Assembly (NCBI RefSeq): GCF_033153115.1
Contig: NW_026889761.1
Span: forward strand, 22,134,001-22,198,000
Length of the DNA: 64,000 bases
DNA from: Saccostrea echinata
Lineage: Eukaryota
Reading direction: 5' to 3'
The notes beneath the pieces were generated by a model. That model was given only the letters and a program-made list of their open reading frames with translations, did not search any database and was not told the DNA's origin. Positions within the stretch are counted from its first letter, which is position 1. Each line of letters opens with the position of its first letter. This document shows, one piece after another, positions 36,804-41,940 of this stretch. Made by a program: the position numbers and the translations under genes.

Positions 36804-38525
36804 ATCCGGACCGCTATGAAATACGTCCGGTCTCTCGGGTGTACTCTGGTGAATTGCGATTTACATAATTGAACGAATTAATTATCGCTAATTAATTACG
36901 ACCAAGTCGTAAATCGTACACTGTCTTATTCTCTTAAAATAGCATAACTATACATGATAAAAAGAAACCAAAGAAAGATAATATGGACAGGAATTTTTAT
37001 AATATGAATTTGGAAGTATTATACATTTTGGAAATGTTTTTAGGACTGTTTATCGGATAAAAGAAATAATGAAAAAAAATTAAGCAATAAATTTGTGTGT
37101 GACTGTTGCTACGCTTGAGGGCGTGGCTTCATTATTCGGCGGGTAGTAGTGTTTTTTAACAAAATGTTTCTCGACGAATCAGATTCAACTAATTTATATG
37201 AAAGTTATTAAATAAAATATGTCCCCTTCCTCAAGACACTCTAGCTTCAATGCAAAGTAAAGGATGACATTTCAAAAGACTTTTAAAGAGCAATTTTATT
37301 TCTTTAGCAGTGATTCAAATTGATGAAATTGATTTCATTTCTCTTGCACAAACCTTTAAAAAACGATAAAAAAAGGGTCTATGGACTTTTTGTACTTAAT
37401 TTGAGCCATAATCTCTACTATTTTGGCATTGCATTGATGAAATAAACTGTAGTTTCGCTGTAAGATATTATTTTGATACATAGAGAGGAGGGGCACTGTT
37501 TTAAGTTAAAATGTATATATGCACAAAAAGACCATACAACAACCTGGTTTGCATATGAAAAACTAGACTTCTACAGACCCTAAGCGAATTCGGGCTGCCT
37601 TTTCCCCCTGTTTTATAATCCAAGACATTTAAAACACCATTTGTTTTCAATCCCTGCGAAGTTATATAAATTTCACTCGCAGTCATTTTTGTCATATTTA
37701 CTGATATTCTCTGTAATAATTATGTATGTGAAATGAGACTGAACTTTTTACTTCCTGTATAGAGTAAATGTATGTACTATAGTCTTGGGAGCAGTTGTTA
37801 TTTCATACTTAATTTGAATATGTGTTATCACCTATTCAAATAGGGGGTATCACCTATTCAAAAGCTGAATAAGTGATATATCACGAATACGAATATGTGA
37901 TATTACCAACTGAATAGTGATATTTCCTATTTGAATAGGTGATAAACCTTAATGATGATAAATACCAAAACGACCCCTCCTACTACTGCTTGCAATAGCA
38001 TACATTCTAGTCTTGGTCCTTTTTATCATATGTTTCATATTTCGATATCTTTCCGATTATAGACGTTGGTGCTCAAATAACAAACGGGATGACTTCAGAA
38101 GTCTCTAAAACATCAAGTAATTCTTATTTAAATTGTCAGGCACTTATATGTCCGAAAATTTCATGACTTACATATGTACACTGTTTAAATCACTGGCTTA
38201 AAAAGGCATGCGGAGGAAACTGAATTAATCGGTAGATTAGACATTGTAAACAATTCTCTCTCTCTCTCTCTCTGGATAGTATAAGCGAAAATAAAAAGAT
38301 TTTTTTAACACAATGATACATAAGTCAAATCAGGATGAAAGCATTTCTACATAGTGTACAATTAATCGATTAATTAAAAAGTGTCAATTCATAAAAGACA
38401 TTTAAAAGACTTATCGAGAAAAACAGGTCATCGATATATCATCAATTTACCTCATGTGATTTTTTTGAGCCACGGGCTTCTTGATTTATTTATTCTTAAG
38501 TTTTTTATCCTCCCCACCTCCCCCC

Positions 38526-41500
38526 AAATGGGGGGTCAAATGCTGGTTCGGTCTCGAAGGGTGTTACCAATGCCACTAGGTCTCACCTTACAAAACCTTG
38601 AGTAATGCCAACCGTCTCAAACAGGTTCTGCCAGCGAATGTCACACCTCCACGTTTGGTGACCCTGGTAATACCTTGGTAGCTGAGTGACAGTGGTGAAA
38701 GGCGAGTCTCCGGCGCCTTTAAATAACTGGAACATGAGGCTAAGGGAAGGAAAACCCCAACAGAAAACCACTGGTCCTCCGAGTCCAGGGGGTTTCTGCA
38801 TGGCTAATCACCAGGCAGAGTAAAAACCTCATGATTACAGAAACTTCCAAATACACTGAGCACACAGCGGGAGGTTAGCCCTCTAACTGTGACAAATATT
38901 AATGCAGAGGACAACATGACGCTGGTGGATGAAAGCCAGTTGGAAGTCCACAAGCCGAAGTCCCTATGCACACCTAAAGACAACATATACATAGGGAGCT
39001 GGAATGTGAGATCTATGTATGTTACAGGGAAAACAGCCCAGATAGAACAGGAGATGGATAGATACCGACTGGATATAATAGGGCTAAGCGAAGTCAGATG
39101 GCCTATGAATGGAAAAACTACATTGCAAAGTGGGAAACTAGTGCTTTACTCAGGACGAGAGGATGGATTACATCAAGAAGGAGTAGGAATAATGCTGACA
39201 AAGAAAGCTAAGAAGTCATTGATGGAATGGAAACCCATAAATGAGAGATTGATGTATGCAAGATTCTATACATCAACTCTAAAGATAAGCCTGATTGTAA
39301 TGTATTCACCAACAAATGAAAGCCCTGAAGAGACAAAGGAAACATTCACGGAAGAACTGCAGGAAGTTATTTATAACACTCCAAAACATGACATACTGCT
39401 CATTATTGGAGATTTCAATGCAAAGGTTGGCAGCAACAACAAAGGCCATGAAAGTGCTATGGGGAAGCATGGAATAGGAGAGCGAAATGAAAATGGAGAA
39501 CGACTATTAGATATATGCGAGCTCAACAACTTAGTCACAGTTAGAGGAGTTAGAGTTAGTTACAGGAACAATATTTCCTCATAAACCAAGACACAAGATC
39601 TCCTGGATATCACCTGATGGAAAGACCGAAAACCAAATTGATCATGTGCTTATATCAAAACAACACAGAGCATCCGTCTCAGATACAAGGGCGATGAGAG
39701 GAGCTGATGCAAGCAGTGATCATGAACTGATAAGGAGTAAGATCAGAATAAAACTGAAGAAACAAAAGCAAAATTCAGATACATGTAGAAAGAAGTATGG
39801 TGTCACAAAACTACAACAGCTAGAGAAAAGGAGAGCATTCACTTTGGAGCTAAAAAATAGATTCCAAGTGCTAGAAGAATTGGAAAGTGTTGAAGACATC
39901 TGGGAAAATATGATAAAGGGTTACAATGAGACAGCAGACAGCATACTTGGAGTAAAAGAAAAGGGACAAAAACCTTGGATAAGCAGAGACTCTTGGAAGG
40001 TAGTAGAAGAAAGGAAGCAGCTAAAACTCCAACTTGTTAACAGCAGATCAGAAAGGTTAAAAAGAAACTTAAGAAACAAATATTCAGTTAAAGACAGAGA
40101 GGTAAAACGCAGCATGAGGAATTACAGGAGAAAGTGGACAGAAGATTTGATTACGGAAGCAGAAAGAGCAGCAAGCAATGGGCACATGAAAACAGTGTAT
40201 GAGATAACTAGAGTAATAAGTAATGAGAAGAAAAGCACAACAACAGCAATAAAGGACAAAGAGGGCAAGACCCTGAGCAGCCAAGATGAAAGAAAGGAAA
40301 GGTGGAAGGAGCACTTTCAAGAAATATTAAACCGCCCACAACCAGAACACCCATTAGAAGTTGAAAGTGAAGGACAAGTAGTAGATGAGATGGATACAAG
40401 CCCCATTCGGAAAGAGGAAATCATCAAGGCTATAAAGAAACTAAAAAATGGAAAAGCTGGAGGAGTAGATGGAATAACAGCTGAGATGTTAAAAGCAGAC
40501 ACAAAGACAACAGCAAGATATTTGGAAAAAACTCTTCACAACAATTTGGAAACAAGAAACCATACCATCGGTTTGGAATAAAGGCCTGATAGTGAAGATT
40601 CCAAAGAAAGATGATAGATCAATATGTGATAATTATAGAGGTATAACACTTTTATCTGTGCCAAGCAAAGTATTCTCCAGAATAGTGATACAAAGAATCC
40701 AAGATGGAGTGGAAAAGCAGCTGCGTGAGGAACAAGCTGGCTTTAGAAGAGGAAGGAGTACAACAGAACAACTATTTACACTCCGTAACATCATAGAACA
40801 ATGTACCGAATGGATTTCAACATTGTTTGTAAACTACGTTGATTTTGAAAAGGCATTTGATTCCATTCATAGAGAGAGCCTTTGGTCTATCATGAAGTTT
40901 TATGGCATCCCAGACAAACTAGTCAGAATGGTGAAACTCCTATACGATTCATTCCAATGTGCAGTCCTAGAAGATGGAGAAGAATCTGACTGGTTCCGGG
41001 TAACAACAGGAGTGAAGCAGGGTTGCACAATGTCTGGATTCCTGTTTTTGTTGGTTATAGATTTTGTAATGAGAAGAACTACAGAAACGGAACCAACAGG
41101 AATAAGGTGGGATTTCACAACAAAACTTGAAGATCTAGACTTCGCAGATGATCTTGCTCTACTATCCTCAAAATTTCGGGACATCCAACAAAAGACACAA
41201 AAACTCAACGAAACTGGTAGTCAAGCTGGACTCAGAATAAACATTGAGAAACCAAAGTGATGAGACTCAACTCTGACATAATAGAGCCAGTCAAGATTGA
41301 TGGACAAGACCTGGAGGATGTAGAAACATTTACTTATCTTGGAGGTGTGATAACATCAAAGGGAGGATCTGATGAGGACATTACCAACAGACTGGGAAAA
41401 GCTAAGTCTCAATTTGGAAGGCTAAAAAAAAATCTGGAGCTCATCAAAATTTTCCATCCAAACAAAAGTAACGTTATTCAACAGCTTGGTCCTGTCAGTT

Positions 41501-41930
41501 CTAATGTATGGAAGTGAGACATGGAAAATAACGGAGAGAGACAAAAAGAAGATTGACACCTTCCAGAATAGATGTCTGAGAAAAATCCTGAGAGTAAGAT
41601 GGCCCGAAAAAATGTCAAATGAAGAACTCCATCATAAAACGAAGACAACTAGAGCGAGTGAGATAATAATTCTCAGGAAGTGGAAGTGGATTGGCCATGT
41701 ACTGAGGATGAAGAATAACAGGATTTGCACCACCGCACTGACATGGCATGAAGAAGGAAAAAGGAAAGTAGGCCGGCCGAAAACAACCTGGAGAAGAACC
41801 ACGGAAGAAAGATTACAGCTGGGATGGAAAAGTTGGGCGTCAGCGAGGGCAACAGCCAAAGACAGAGACAGGTGGAAGAAGTGTATCGGGGCCTTATGTG
41901 CCAGCGGGCACGAAGAGGATAGGTGAGGTG
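38526..41930 (+). mobile_element. Full-length RTE-clade non-LTR retrotransposon (APE endonuclease + RT), disrupted by a few frameshifts and a stop
   Basis: APE motifs IGSWNVRS, GLSEVRW, GDFNAKVG, SDHELI. RT motifs YRGITLLS, DFEKAFDS, GVKQGC, FADDL. RTE-type C-terminus KWIGHVLR...GRPKTTW. (AGGTG)2 tail. 10-bp TSD ACCTCCCCCC at 38516-38525 and 41931-41940. Confidence 0.95.
38532..38691 (+). ncRNA. HDV-like self-cleaving ribozyme at the 5' end of the RTE element
   Basis: Nested double pseudoknot by inspection: P1 GGGGUC 38532-37/GACCCU 38660-65 (G1.U), P2 UGUCAC 38639-44/GUGACA 38686-91, P3 ACC/GGU, L3 UCCACGUUU, P1.1 CC/GG 38666-67, short P4, J4/2 GCUGA with the C75 equivalent at 38682. Confidence 0.8.
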
Positions 41931-41940
41931 ACCTCCCCCC

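What the first reader, a model, noticed from the sequence alone, without database searches (positions are those of the whole stretch)
38526..38691. Complete HDV-like ribozyme with an approximately 100-nt J1/2 insertion at the 5' end of a full-length RTE retrotransposon
Seen: every element of the HDV fold is present in order. P1 (GGGGUC/GACCCU, G.U at the cleavage site), P2 (UGUCAC/GUGACA), P3 (ACC/GGU), L3 UCCACGUUU with CC pairing to GG (P1.1), a minimal P4 (UAC-CUUG-GUA), and J4/2 GCUGA. J1/2 (38538-38638) is long and closed by its own helix (UGCUGG/CCAGCG). The predicted cut 5' of G38532 lies 6 nt from the element boundary set independently by the TSD. Known: HDV-like ribozymes process the 5' ends of R2, RTE and L1Tc-type elements. 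Inference: this ribozyme releases element RNA from read-through transcripts. The 6-bp P1, tiny P4 and large J1/2 make it an unusual variant. If the copy is still active, it could cut any + strand host transcript passing through.
Basis: partly seen in the sequence, partly recalled or inferred. Interest (0 to 1): 0.78.

Follow-up and report, generated by a model that had tools for sequence, protein, structure and literature searches.

The report
HDV-like ribozyme heading oyster RTE retrotransposon
The first 160 bases of a decayed RTE jumping gene in an oyster genome fold as a hepatitis-delta-type self-cutting RNA that very probably trims the element's transcript to its exact first base, which is a real but already known kind of device.

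Summary
A simple HDV descriptor finds exactly this site and nothing else on either strand of the 64-kb window.

The evidence comes mainly from the element's relatives. The genome is Saccostrea echinata.
- Element starts: 24 of 30 related copies begin with the same GGGGTC after unrelated flanks. In 10 of 14 other copies examined over their full length, the target-site duplication ends exactly at the predicted cleavage G.
- Fold: 96.7% of pair cells are kept across copies, against 23-48% in slid controls. Adding three metagenome RTE lineages gives 19 of 45 pairs with compensatory changes, in P1, P2, P3, P4 and J1/2.

- The element is full-length only in extent. Its ORF has at least 4 frameshifts.
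- This copy has lost the 5' strand of a family-wide P2 extension.
- Its C6 flank can sequester the P1 G-run.
- A 6-bp P1, a small P4 and a structured J1/2 are documented for retrotransposon HDV-like ribozymes (PMC3774820, PMC4908430), so the variant is not unusual.

The scan noted the same family earlier on other DNA of this genome (s1-817790). Cleavage itself is untested. Verdict: a new member of a known kind.

The parts
38516..38525 (.). 5' copy of the target-site duplication (ACCTCCCCCC)
   Evidence: The exact 10-nt repeat recurs at 41931-41940.
38526..38531 (+). Six letters (AAATGG) between the TSD and the first ribozyme base. They are either extra junction nucleotides or, for AAA, part of a longer imperfect TSD.
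   Evidence: In 10 of 14 other copies no such letters exist.
38520..38535 (+). Flank/P1 competitor hairpin: CCCCCC, loop AAAU, GGGGGG
   Evidence: It is predicted in the MFE and centroid folds of 38500-38696. It also surfaced as a spurious Rfam hairpin hit. That it inhibits cleavage is inference.
38532..38537 (+). P1 5' strand (GGGGUC). The predicted cleavage site is 5' of G38532.
   Evidence: It pairs with 38660-38665. Homology among copies starts here. TSDs abut this base in 10 of 14 other copies.
38538..38638 (+). J1/2 peripheral domain (P1.2-like). Its closing helix is 38542-38547 with 38630-38635, and it has inner helices.
   Evidence: RNAalifold and pair counts show compensatory changes in the inner helices. 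Fold z = -1.68 for the window copy and -3.25 for L033. The window copy has mismatches in two inner helices.
38639..38644 (+). P2 5' strand (UGUCAC)
   Evidence: It pairs with 38686-38691. A U-A to C-G compensatory change is present in one subfamily, and A-U to G-C in L121.
38645..38647 (+). P3 5' strand (ACC)
   Evidence: It pairs with 38657-38659. It covaries with AUG/CAU in L121 and ACG/CGU in L119.
38648..38656 (+). L3 (UCCACGUUU). C38649 and C38650 form P1.1 with G38667 and G38666.
   Evidence: L3 is 7-10 nt long across subfamilies and is UCCUCGU in the largest one.
38657..38659 (+). P3 3' strand (GGU)
38660..38665 (+). P1 3' strand (GACCCU)
   Evidence: It covaries with the P1 5' strand in L121 and L119.
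38666..38667 (+). P1.1 3' strand (GG)
38671..38680 (+). Minimal P4 (UAC, loop CUUG, GUA)
   Evidence: The middle pair is G.U, A-U or G-C across copies. L121 has a 7-bp P4.
38681..38685 (+). J4/2 (GCUGA). C38682 is the candidate catalytic cytosine.
   Evidence: The C is kept in 27 of 28 rows of A2, with L017 carrying T, and in 8 of 8 rows of A8. Its catalytic role is inferred from the HDV family.
38686..38691 (+). P2 3' strand (GUGACA)
38692..38696 (+). 3' strand of the family's P2 extension (GUGGU). It is orphaned here because the 5' partner is deleted between 38637 and 38638.
   Evidence: See A2 columns 111-115 with 172-176. There is 1 A-U and 24 G-C at the outer pair, and A-U to G-C in 3 of 7 rows of A8. 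The window row is gapped.
38697..38830 (+). Conserved structured 5' UTR segment downstream of the ribozyme (several hairpins)
   Evidence: It is 80-86% identical among subfamilies whose ORFs are 40-64% identical. It is also present in the metagenome loci L121, L119 and L114. 8 of 28 predicted pairs carry compensatory changes.
38916..41920 (+). Broken APE-RT coding region, spread over frames 1, 2, 3, 2, 3
   Evidence: Pfam finds Exo_endo_phos and RVT_1. tblastn of three open relatives shows frame changes near 39540-39556, 40517-40542, 41248-41251 and 41424-41427.
41922..41930 (+). 3' tail, about two GGTGA units
   Evidence: Other subfamilies end in GTAA or ATG repeats.
41931..41940 (.). 3' copy of the target-site duplication

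Best explanation
The first ~165-172 nt of a family of RTE-type non-LTR retrotransposons in this oyster genome encode an HDV-like self-cleaving ribozyme. It has a 6-bp P1, P1.1, P3, a small P4, a P2 that the family extends to about 11 bp, and a ~100-nt structured J1/2 'P1.2-type' domain.

Inferred mechanism. The element has no need of its own exact start site. When it is transcribed as part of a longer RNA, the ribozyme folds and cuts 5' of its first G. The released element RNA therefore begins at that G and still carries the whole ribozyme. Full-length reverse transcripts then insert with the target-site duplication directly against that G.

The window copy. This is an old, coding-dead member. 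Its catalytic core is intact on paper. However, it has lost the 5' strand of the P2 extension, carries mismatches in J1/2, and sits behind a C-run that can trap the P1 G-run. Its own activity is therefore uncertain; I put it at about even odds.
For: Shown:
- Pairings are at the stated coordinates.
- The descriptor gives a single hit in the window, against 2 hits in 10 shuffles.
- 27 of 40 genomic matches start at query position 7, which is window position 38532.
- 24 of 30 aligned copies start GGGGTC after unrelated flanks.
- TSDs of 10-15 bp end exactly at G1 in 10 of 14 other copies. Two more have a 2-nt offset and 2 have no TSD found.
- Across 27 distinct genomic copies, 96.7% of 1,062 pair cells are paired, against 22.9-48.0% when the partner is slid.
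- RNAalifold by itself predicts P2, P3, P4 and the J1/2 helices.
- Across 5 oyster subfamilies plus 3 metagenome RTE lineages, 19 of 45 pairs have changes on both sides. Shuffles give 8.1 +/- 1.8 (0 of 500 reach the observed value) and slid controls give 2-6.
- P1 reads GGGGUC/GACCCU in the oyster, GGGGUU/AACCCC in L121 and GGGGCU/AGCCCC in L119. P3 reads ACC/GGU, AUG/CAU and ACG/CGU respectively.
- The core of sister copy L033 aligns in register to Rfam drz-agam-1 (22.2 bits, E 0.018) and HDV-F-prausnitzii (20.9 bits).
- A more distant RTE locus, L132, matches drz-agam-2-2 (23.3 bits, E 2e-4).
- The 5' module is 80-86% identical between subfamilies whose ORFs are 40-64% identical.

From papers, passages read. 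HDV-like ribozymes cleave at the 5' end of R4, L1Tc and RTE elements (PMC3774820; PMC6765202). A structured J1/2 plus an extended P2 accelerates the mosquito Agam-2-1 ribozyme (PMC4908430).
Against: - No cleavage assay and no usable RNA data exist. All 20 listed runs are Logan contigs of guessed kind and none is on record as RNA. The laid contigs only show that another copy's flank diverges at G1.
- The window copy has no Rfam match. The matches of its relatives are below gathering scores and L121 has none.
- MFE z-scores are unremarkable.
- Within the genome alone, the number of pairs with compensatory change is not above shuffles: 5 observed against 3.8, with 108 of 500 shuffles reaching it.
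- The A8 alignment was fitted to the model's nested helices, which favours them. P1 and P1.1 were not in the model.
- L119 needs one unpaired U between P1 and P1.1.
- Only 4 of 80 metagenome RTE loci carry the motif, one of them weakly.
- The window copy lacks the P2 extension and has a flank hairpin that competes with P1.
Confidence: 0.88

Rival explanations
1. The family ribozyme is real, but the window copy is a dead relic that no longer cuts. It has lost the 5' strand of the P2 extension, has mismatches in the J1/2 domain, and sits behind a C6 leader that traps the P1 G-run. At this locus it would be a fossil with no effect on host transcripts.
For: - The 5-nt deletion removes alignment columns 111-115 in the window row only: 1 of 28 rows.
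- C.A and A.C mismatches occur in J1/2 helices, and the J1/2 fold has z = -1.68 against -3.25 for L033.
- The MFE fold of 38500-38696 pairs 38520-38525 with 38530-38535.
- The ORF has at least 4 frameshifts, so nothing has selected this copy for a long time.
- In PMC4908430 (passages), an Agam-2-1 construct with P1.2 but without the extended P2 was about 175 times slower.
Against: - All core pairs (P1, P1.1, inner P2, P3, P4) and the J4/2 cytosine are intact.
[quoted passage not shown] In PMC4908430, shorter linkers partly restored the rate.
- MFE prediction cannot weigh the pseudoknot against the leader hairpin.
Confidence: 0.45
2. The uniform 5' end at G1 is a transcription start set by an internal promoter in the conserved 5' module. 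On this reading the HDV-like fold plays no part in making the end.
For: - A fixed start site would also give identical 5' ends and abutting TSDs.
- The whole ~290-nt 5' module is conserved, not just the ribozyme.
- PMC4758252 (passages) interprets a shared ~70-bp LINE/SINE 5' domain in molluscs, including Saccostrea, as a LINE promoter.
- There are no RNA data here.
Against: - A promoter needs no RNA pairing, yet helices show compensatory changes, including P1, whose first base is the element's first base.
- L3 and J4/2 match HDV-like consensus models.
- The two functions are not exclusive. L1Tc's Pr77 is reported to have both (PMC4758252, passage).
Confidence: 0.07
3. The HDV-like pairing scheme is a chance resemblance in a conserved 5' UTR whose real structure or function is different.
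For: - No Rfam hit for the window copy.
- MFE z-scores are near zero.
- The descriptor yields about 0.2 chance hits per window.
Against: - The single hit sits exactly at the element's 5' end.
- The fold is kept in 96.7% of cells, against 23-48% in slid controls.
- Compensatory changes occur in every helix class across lineages.
- Sub-threshold but in-register hits to three Rfam HDV-like models occur in relatives.
Confidence: 0.03

Closest known systems
drz-Agam-2 family of HDV-like ribozymes (Anopheles gambiae; Rfam RF01788 drz-agam-2-2; Webb et al. 2016, PMC4908430)
   Same: - Both are HDV-like double pseudoknots with a long structured J1/2 (P1.2) domain and a P2 extended beyond the usual ~7 bp. 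The family here has 6 + 5 bp with one bulged A.
- A distant RTE relative, L132, matches RF01788 at 23.3 bits, mainly in J1/2.
- That these mosquito ribozymes belong to RTE elements is my recollection of Ruminski et al. 2011, which was not held. PMC3774820 and PMC6765202 (passages) do state that RTE elements carry HDV-like ribozymes.
   Different: - No Rfam match for the window copy or for L121.
- The J1/2 here is a branched domain of about 100 nt with its own sequence.
- The host is a bivalve.
- The window copy has lost the 5' strand of the P2 extension.
R2 retrotransposon HDV-like ribozymes (Eickbush and Eickbush; PMC3774820)
   Same: - They process the 5' end of a non-LTR element out of a co-transcript.
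- P1 is typically 6 or 7 bp, J1/2 runs from tens to hundreds of nt, and P4 is variable or absent (passages of PMC3774820).
   Different: - R2 is specific to the 28S rDNA site and often uses 28S sequence as the P1 5' strand, cutting upstream of the element.
- Here insertions are dispersed with varied flanks, and P1 is wholly element-encoded with the cut at the element's first base.
L1Tc/ingi Pr77 HDV-like ribozyme (Sanchez-Luque et al. 2011; PMC4035085 abstract; PMC4758252 passage)
   Same: A conserved 5' module is shared by otherwise diverged LINE lineages. It contains an HDV-like ribozyme that frees the element RNA from co-transcripts.
   Different: Pr77 is a compact 77-nt unit in trypanosomatids with reported promoter activity. 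Here the ribozyme is about 170 nt and is followed by a further ~135-nt structured segment. Promoter activity was not tested.
Genomic HDV and CPEB3 ribozymes
   Same: - The same order of helices.
- A G at the cleavage site, paired G.U in the oyster copies.
- L3 begins UCC, and UCCUCG occurs in the main subfamily.
- J4/2 reads G-C-N-R-A.
The comparison with the HDV and CPEB3 sequences is from memory.
   Different: Those have a 7-bp P1 and a J1/2 of a few nt or less. Their contexts are a circular RNA replicon and a mammalian intron.

Membership tests
HDV-like self-cleaving ribozymes | Nested double pseudoknot in the order P1, (J1/2), P2, P3, L3, P3', P1', P1.1, P4, J4/2, P2' | tested here: met
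   The coordinates are read and the descriptor hit is. Pairing is kept in 96.7% of cells across 27 distinct copies and 94.6% across 8 lineages, with 19 of 45 covarying pairs.
HDV-like self-cleaving ribozymes | Cleavage immediately 5' of the first nucleotide of P1 (a G) | tested here: inconclusive
   Chemistry was not tested. As a proxy, homology and TSDs start exactly at G1 in 10 of 14 other copies and 24 of 30 copies start GGGGTC. A fixed transcription start would give the same result.
HDV-like self-cleaving ribozymes | Conserved cytosine in J4/2 (the C75 equivalent) within C-N-R-A | tested here: met
   C38682 lies in GCUGA. The C is kept in 27 of 28 rows of A2 and 8 of 8 rows of A8. Its catalytic role is inferred.
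HDV-like self-cleaving ribozymes | A 3-bp P3 closing an L3 whose two cytosines form the 2-bp P1.1 with the two G after P1' | tested here: met
   P1.1 is 98.1% paired. P3 covaries across lineages.
HDV-like self-cleaving ribozymes | Match to curated covariance models (Rfam HDV-like families) at gathering score | tested here: not met
   The window copy has no match at E up to 10. Relatives match only below gathering: L033 to drz-agam-1 at 22.2 bits against 37 and to HDV-F-prausnitzii at 20.9 against 44; L132 to drz-agam-2-2 at 23.3 against 38. The long J1/2 separates P1 from the core, and these models do not allow for that.
HDV-like self-cleaving ribozymes | Mg2+-dependent self-scission giving a 2',3'-cyclic phosphate and a 5'-OH | not testable with these tools
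   This needs an in vitro transcription and cleavage assay.
RTE-clade non-LTR retrotransposons | A single ORF of about 1,000 aa with an N-terminal APE-type endonuclease and a reverse transcriptase; element of about 3.2-3.6 kb | tested here: met
   Pfam finds Exo_endo_phos and RVT_1 in the window pieces. Open ORFs of 1,033-1,057 aa occur in three relatives. Elements measure 3,366-3,402 bp between TSDs. PMC10294476 (passage) gives 3.2 kb as the canonical RTE-BovB length.
RTE-clade non-LTR retrotransposons | Placement inside the RTE clade in an RT phylogeny with reference elements | not tested
No reference RTE sequences were at hand.
RTE-clade non-LTR retrotransposons | 3' end formed of short tandem repeats rather than poly(A), plus target-site duplications | tested here: met
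   Tails are GTAA repeats, ATG repeats, or about two GGTGA units. TSDs of 10-15 bp occur in 12 of 14 other copies and in the window copy. That this tail type is typical of RTE is recalled; see also the title of reference 123 in PMC6765202.

The most novel reading that the evidence does not exclude
The ribozyme may be only the front half of a ~300-nt 5' cassette. The cassette would consist of the HDV-like ribozyme plus a ~135-nt multi-hairpin RNA with its own compensatory changes.

This cassette is kept at 80-86% identity between oyster RTE subfamilies whose coding sequence has drifted to 40-64%. It is also recognisable in RTE contigs from other, unidentified hosts.

On this reading the cassette is a self-contained unit that couples 5' processing to a second RNA function. 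That function could be cap-independent translation start or recognition by the element's own protein. The cassette is either under far stronger selection than the protein or is passed between RTE lineages.
Probability: 0.35. Interest if true: 0.6.

Novelty: new member of a known kind. Interest (0 to 1): 0.36.

Why it matters
- It adds a well-supported, covariation-backed bivalve lineage to the HDV-like ribozymes of RTE elements. Current Rfam models do not detect it.
- It gives a clean genomic signature of ribozyme-defined 5' ends, namely TSDs that abut the cleavage G.
- The family's branched J1/2 domain and bulged 11-bp P2 are natural variants of the 'pinch' architecture studied in the mosquito Agam-2 ribozyme.
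- The window copy is a natural deletion of the P2 extension and could be assayed beside intact copies.
- The conserved structured segment just downstream of the ribozyme is the part that may hold something new.
- For genome annotation, the covariance models built here would mark the true 5' ends of these elements in oyster assemblies.

Tried and rejected
Steps that led nowhere or gave limited results:
- Rfam scans of the window gave only chance-level hits to unrelated families.
- MFE folding is blind to the pseudoknot and gave no signal.
- RNA evidence. The one run search returned 20 runs, all Logan contigs of guessed kind and none on record as RNA. Laying four of them (one study, at most two samples) on L033 placed 26 records. 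Three of these stop at G1 with the same foreign 30-nt flank. None bridges the L033 flank and there is no depth in the flanks. This shows another copy of the subfamily. It says nothing about cleavage or expression.
- The 37 lower-scoring genomic hits to model R1 are mostly decayed old copies and add little covariation. One duplicated locus, L076/L077, reads GGUACC/GGUCCU in P1, which is two compensatory changes and one mismatch. I treat it as anecdotal.
- A second, broader model (R2) found no further ribozymes in the 80 metagenome loci. My relaxed descriptor found only L119 and L121 on the + strands and nothing on the - strands. I did not establish what the other RTE relatives with enough upstream sequence carry at their 5' ends.
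- Host-gene context. 7 flanking ORFs of 89-148 aa have no Pfam match, so whether a + strand host transcript crosses the site is unknown.
- I considered a 7-bp P1 made by taking the last U of P3'. I rejected it because P3 covaries as a 3-bp helix.
- I considered GUCAC upstream of P2 as an alternative P2 register. I prefer the stacked extension, because both can form together and the outer pairs covary. RNAalifold of the downstream part alone pairs the same GUGG with a downstream CCAC instead, so the choice remains open.

Papers not seen:
- Ruminski et al. 2011 (PMC3308841) is not held. What I say of it is recalled, or comes from papers that cite it.
- Supplementary files were not opened. Supplementary Table S1 of PMC4908430 and the figures of PMC4758252 may bear on the comparison.
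- Searches for 'HDV-like' + 'ribozyme' + 'oyster' returned 1 paper, on R2 (listing only). PMC10294476 on bivalve transposons has 0 occurrences of 'ribozyme'. I therefore found no printed description of this oyster RTE ribozyme in the held library.
Full report
**What is in the window.**
- P1 is G38532-C38537 with G38660-U38665, with a G.U at the base.
- P2 is 38639-38644 with 38686-38691.
- P3 is 38645-38647 with 38657-38659.
- L3 is 38648-38656. Its C38649 and C38650 can pair with G38667 and G38666 to form P1.1.
- A three-pair P4 lies at 38671-38680.
- J4/2 is GCUGA, with C38682.
- The 101-nt J1/2 is closed by GCUGGU (38542-38547) with GCCAGC (38630-38635).

I wrote a simple descriptor of the HDV fold. 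It found this one site and nothing else on either strand of the 64-kb window. It found nothing on a reversed decoy and 2 hits in 10 block-shuffled windows. A chance hit somewhere in a window is therefore not rare, at roughly 0.2 per window. One sitting exactly at an element's first base is.

Three results give no support. Rfam gives no HDV-like match for this copy, even when only 351 nt are searched with lax filters. Pseudoknot-blind MFE energies are unremarkable, with z = +0.45 and z = -0.80.

**The element.** The TSD ACCTCCCCCC lies at 38516-38525 and 41931-41940. From G38532 to the 3' TSD is 3,399 bp. Pfam finds an APE-type endonuclease and RVT_1 in the ORF pieces. The coding region is spread over frames 1, 2, 3, 2, 3 when compared with three open relatives, so there are at least four frameshifts. 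The copy is full-length in extent but dead as a gene.

Six letters (AAATGG) separate the TSD from G38532. Because the 3' TSD copy runs on as TAAAAAAA, three of these six may belong to an imperfect longer TSD.

**The genome and the family.** The window's assembly has 923 Mb in 425 contigs. A protein 96% identical to a family ORF is named as a Saccostrea echinata protein. It sits on a contig of 36,248,625 bp, which is the exact length of this assembly's contig C30. I take the genome to be that oyster.

A DNA search of the genome with 38526-38900 scored 40 of 79 candidates. Of those 40 matches, 27 begin at query position 7, which is G38532. In an alignment of 30 loci with 30 nt of flank, homology begins exactly at GGGGTC. 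24 of the 30 rows carry that hexamer, 6 differ within its first four letters, and the upstream sequences are unrelated.

I fetched 14 other copies over their whole length.
- In 10 of them a 10-15-bp TSD ends immediately before the first G.
- In 2 the TSD ends 2 nt before it.
- In 2 I found no TSD.

This is the footprint expected if the transposing RNA starts at the ribozyme's cleavage site and carries the whole ribozyme along.

There are at least three young subfamilies, with copies 97.5-99.7% identical to each other. Uninterrupted ORFs of 1,033-1,057 aa occur in three of the fetched copies. The window copy belongs to a small, older subfamily: 3 of the 30 loci.

**Structure conservation inside the genome.** RNAalifold on 30 copies predicts P2, P3, P4 and the J1/2 helices without being told. 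I then counted the full pseudoknotted structure on 27 distinct rows.
- 96.7% of 1,062 cells are standard pairs, against 22.9-48.0% when the 3' partners are slid by 1-3 columns.
- 0 of 500 shuffles reach the observed paired percentage or covariation score.
- The copies are close relatives, so the number of pairs with compensatory change is not above shuffles: 5 observed against 3.8, with 108 of 500 shuffles reaching it.
- Individual changes fit the fold. One P2 pair is U-A in 17 rows and C-G in 8. The middle P4 pair is G.U, A-U or G-C. J1/2 pairs switch G-C/A-U/U-A. One subfamily has U.G for U-A in P1.

The J4/2 cytosine is kept in 27 of 28 aligned rows. L017 has T.

All other subfamilies have five more letters (GUCAC, or AUCAC in L002) just 5' of P2. 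Beyond one bulged A, these can pair with the GUGGC or GUGGU that follows P2'. This makes P2 about 11 bp. The outer pair is G-C in 24 rows, A-U in 1 and G.U in 1.

The window copy alone has these five letters deleted. Its 38692-38696 is therefore an orphan strand.

**Relatives outside the genome.** A covariance model built from 26 oyster copies (R1) matched 77 of 150 scored candidates in the oyster genome. It matched 4 of the 80 metagenome RTE loci: L121 at 93.6 bits, L119 at 81.1, L114 at 41.4 and L132 at 15.4. A second model (R2) gave the same four.

These lineages supply the covariation that the oyster copies lack.

| Helix | Oyster | L121 | L119 |
|---|---|---|---|
| P1 | GGGGUC/GACCCU | GGGGUU/AACCCC | GGGGCU/AGCCCC |
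| P3 | ACC/GGU | AUG/CAU | ACG/CGU |
| P2 | UGUCAC/GUGACA | UGUCGC/GCGACA | same as oyster |

The P2 extension changes A-U to G-C in 3 of 7 rows. P4 is 7 bp in L121. J4/2 stays G-C-N-G-A in these two loci, and the main oyster subfamily reads GCUAA.

On the 8-row alignment:
- 19 of 45 pairs have changes on both sides, against 8.1 +/- 1.8 in shuffles (0 of 500 reach it) and 2-6 in slid controls.
- 94.6% of cells are paired, against 27-44% in slid controls.

Two caveats apply. The alignment was fitted to the model for the nested helices, although P1 and P1.1 were not in the model. L119 needs one unpaired U between P1' and P1.1, and its true first G lies one base upstream of the model's start.

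**Link to curated families.** The core of L033, the main oyster subfamily with L3 = UCCUCGU, aligns in register to two Rfam models. These are drz-agam-1 (22.2 bits, E 0.018, gathering 37) and HDV-F-prausnitzii (20.9 bits, gathering 44). L132 matches drz-agam-2-2 (23.3 bits, E 2e-4, gathering 38), mostly through its J1/2 domain. L121 has no such hit. All are below threshold. They are hints of kinship, and current models would not annotate this family.

**How it most likely works.** What is shown: the fold, its conservation, and the coincidence of its first base with the element's first base. What is inferred from the HDV-like family (passages of PMC3774820, PMC6765202 and PMC4908430): the element is transcribed within a longer RNA, and the J1/2 domain forms first and brings P1 and P2 together. 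The J4/2 cytosine and a Mg2+ ion then catalyse attack of the 2'-OH of the base before G1. The leader leaves, and the element RNA starts with a 5'-OH G and retains the ribozyme. A further role in translation start has been proposed for such ribozymes (PMC6765202 passage). I did not test that.

**The window copy itself.** Its core is intact on paper. Four things count against activity:
1. It lacks the 5' strand of the P2 extension.
2. It has a C.A and an A.C mismatch in two J1/2 helices.
3. Its J1/2 folds less convincingly than L033's, with z = -1.68 against -3.25.
4. The flank's CCCCCC (38520-38525) pairs with GGGGGG (38530-38535) in the MFE and centroid folds of a read-through transcript, which would sequester four of the six P1 bases.

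In the mosquito Agam-2-1 ribozyme, a construct with P1.2 but without the extended P2 was about 175-fold slower, and shorter linkers partly rescued it (PMC4908430 passage). The window deletion does both things at once. I therefore put the chance that this particular copy still cuts efficiently at about one half. I found no sign of a + strand host gene running through it. The RNA data available were Logan contigs of unknown kind and cannot speak to cleavage.

**Comparison with what is known.** HDV-like ribozymes at the 5' ends of R2, R4, L1Tc, baggins and RTE elements are established (PMC3774820, PMC6765202).
- P1 of '6 or 7 bp' (PMC3774820; PMC4908430).
- J1/2 of hundreds of nt, and a P4 that may be absent (PMC3774820).
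- A helical J1/2 'P1.2' domain with an extended P2 (PMC4908430).

The closest described relatives are the mosquito drz-Agam-2 ribozymes.

What is new here:
- the host, a bivalve;
- the particular branched J1/2;
- the bulged P2 extension;
- the fact that Rfam does not find it.

I found no paper in the held library describing it. The same scan had already noted the family on another piece of this genome (s1-817790). That note agrees with my reading at the family level.

**Seen in passing.** The conserved 5' module does not stop at the ribozyme.
- Among five subfamilies the first ~290 nt are 80-86% identical. The rest of the element is 40-64% identical in the same alignment, or about 67-72% where BLAST can align it at all.
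- The ~135 nt after the ribozyme are also present, nearly unchanged, in L121, L119 and L114.
- This segment folds into several hairpins, with compensatory changes in 8 of 28 predicted pairs.

Its function is unknown. This segment is the part of the locus that may deserve further work.

**Verdict.** This is a genuine HDV-like ribozyme family that heads oyster RTE elements. The window holds an old, coding-dead copy of uncertain activity. It is a new member of a known kind and of moderate to low surprise.

Noticed in passing
window 38697-38830; L033 377-505; L121 953-1080; L119 794-920: A ~135-nt segment directly after the ribozyme is as conserved as the ribozyme itself, across oyster subfamilies and in metagenome RTE contigs. 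It folds into several hairpins, and 8 of 28 predicted pairs carry compensatory changes. Its function is unknown; it could be a translation start, a protein-binding site or a promoter.
   Followed up: partly
window 38637-38638 and 38692-38696: The window copy alone (1 of 28 aligned rows) lacks the five letters that form the 5' strand of the family's P2 extension. The 3' strand is left unpaired.
   Followed up: yes
window 38520-38535: The insertion landed behind a C6 run. Together with the element's G-run this makes a six-G-C-pair hairpin across the predicted cleavage site, which could block P1 in read-through RNA.
   Followed up: partly
L034 (G000:C14:2914450-2918650), element about 1,022 bp: An internally deleted copy keeps the ribozyme end and the 3' end and has its own 11-bp TSD abutting G1. 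A non-coding derivative has therefore been mobilised in trans.
   Followed up: partly
P0014, P0025, P0038, P0041, P0055: RTE proteins named from freshwater fishes (Prochilodus, Paramisgurnus, Cirrhinus) are 57-63% identical to the oyster L033 ORF. That is closer than the window's own subfamily is to L033 (38-51%). This hints at horizontal spread among aquatic animals. I did not check their 5' ends.
   Followed up: no
L017 and L018 (G000:C58:1706164 and C48:463197): These two loci are identical including their flanks, so they are a segmental or assembly duplicate. They carry T in place of the J4/2 cytosine.
   Followed up: no
L076 and L077 (G000:C34): A duplicated old copy has a long C-run expansion in L3 and a P1 reading GGUACC/GGUCCU. 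That is two compensatory changes and one mismatch relative to the main family.
   Followed up: no
L132 797-931 (metagenome contig OMJW01000141.1): A more distant RTE relative (40% protein identity) carries a shorter HDV-like candidate with a 7-bp P1 and a ~60-nt J1/2. It matches Rfam drz-agam-2-2 below threshold.
   Followed up: partly
3' ends of L032-L044 and window 41922-41930: Subfamilies that share the 5' module end in different short tandem repeats: GTAA units, ATG units, or GGTGA units in the window copy.
   Followed up: no
PMC4758252 (passages): A ~70-bp 5' domain shared by mollusc 'LP-SINEs' (including Saccostrea glomerata), two Nimb LINEs and a turtle RTE was read there as a LINE promoter. 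I could not compare it with this module because figures are not held. It may or may not be the same sequence.
   Followed up: no
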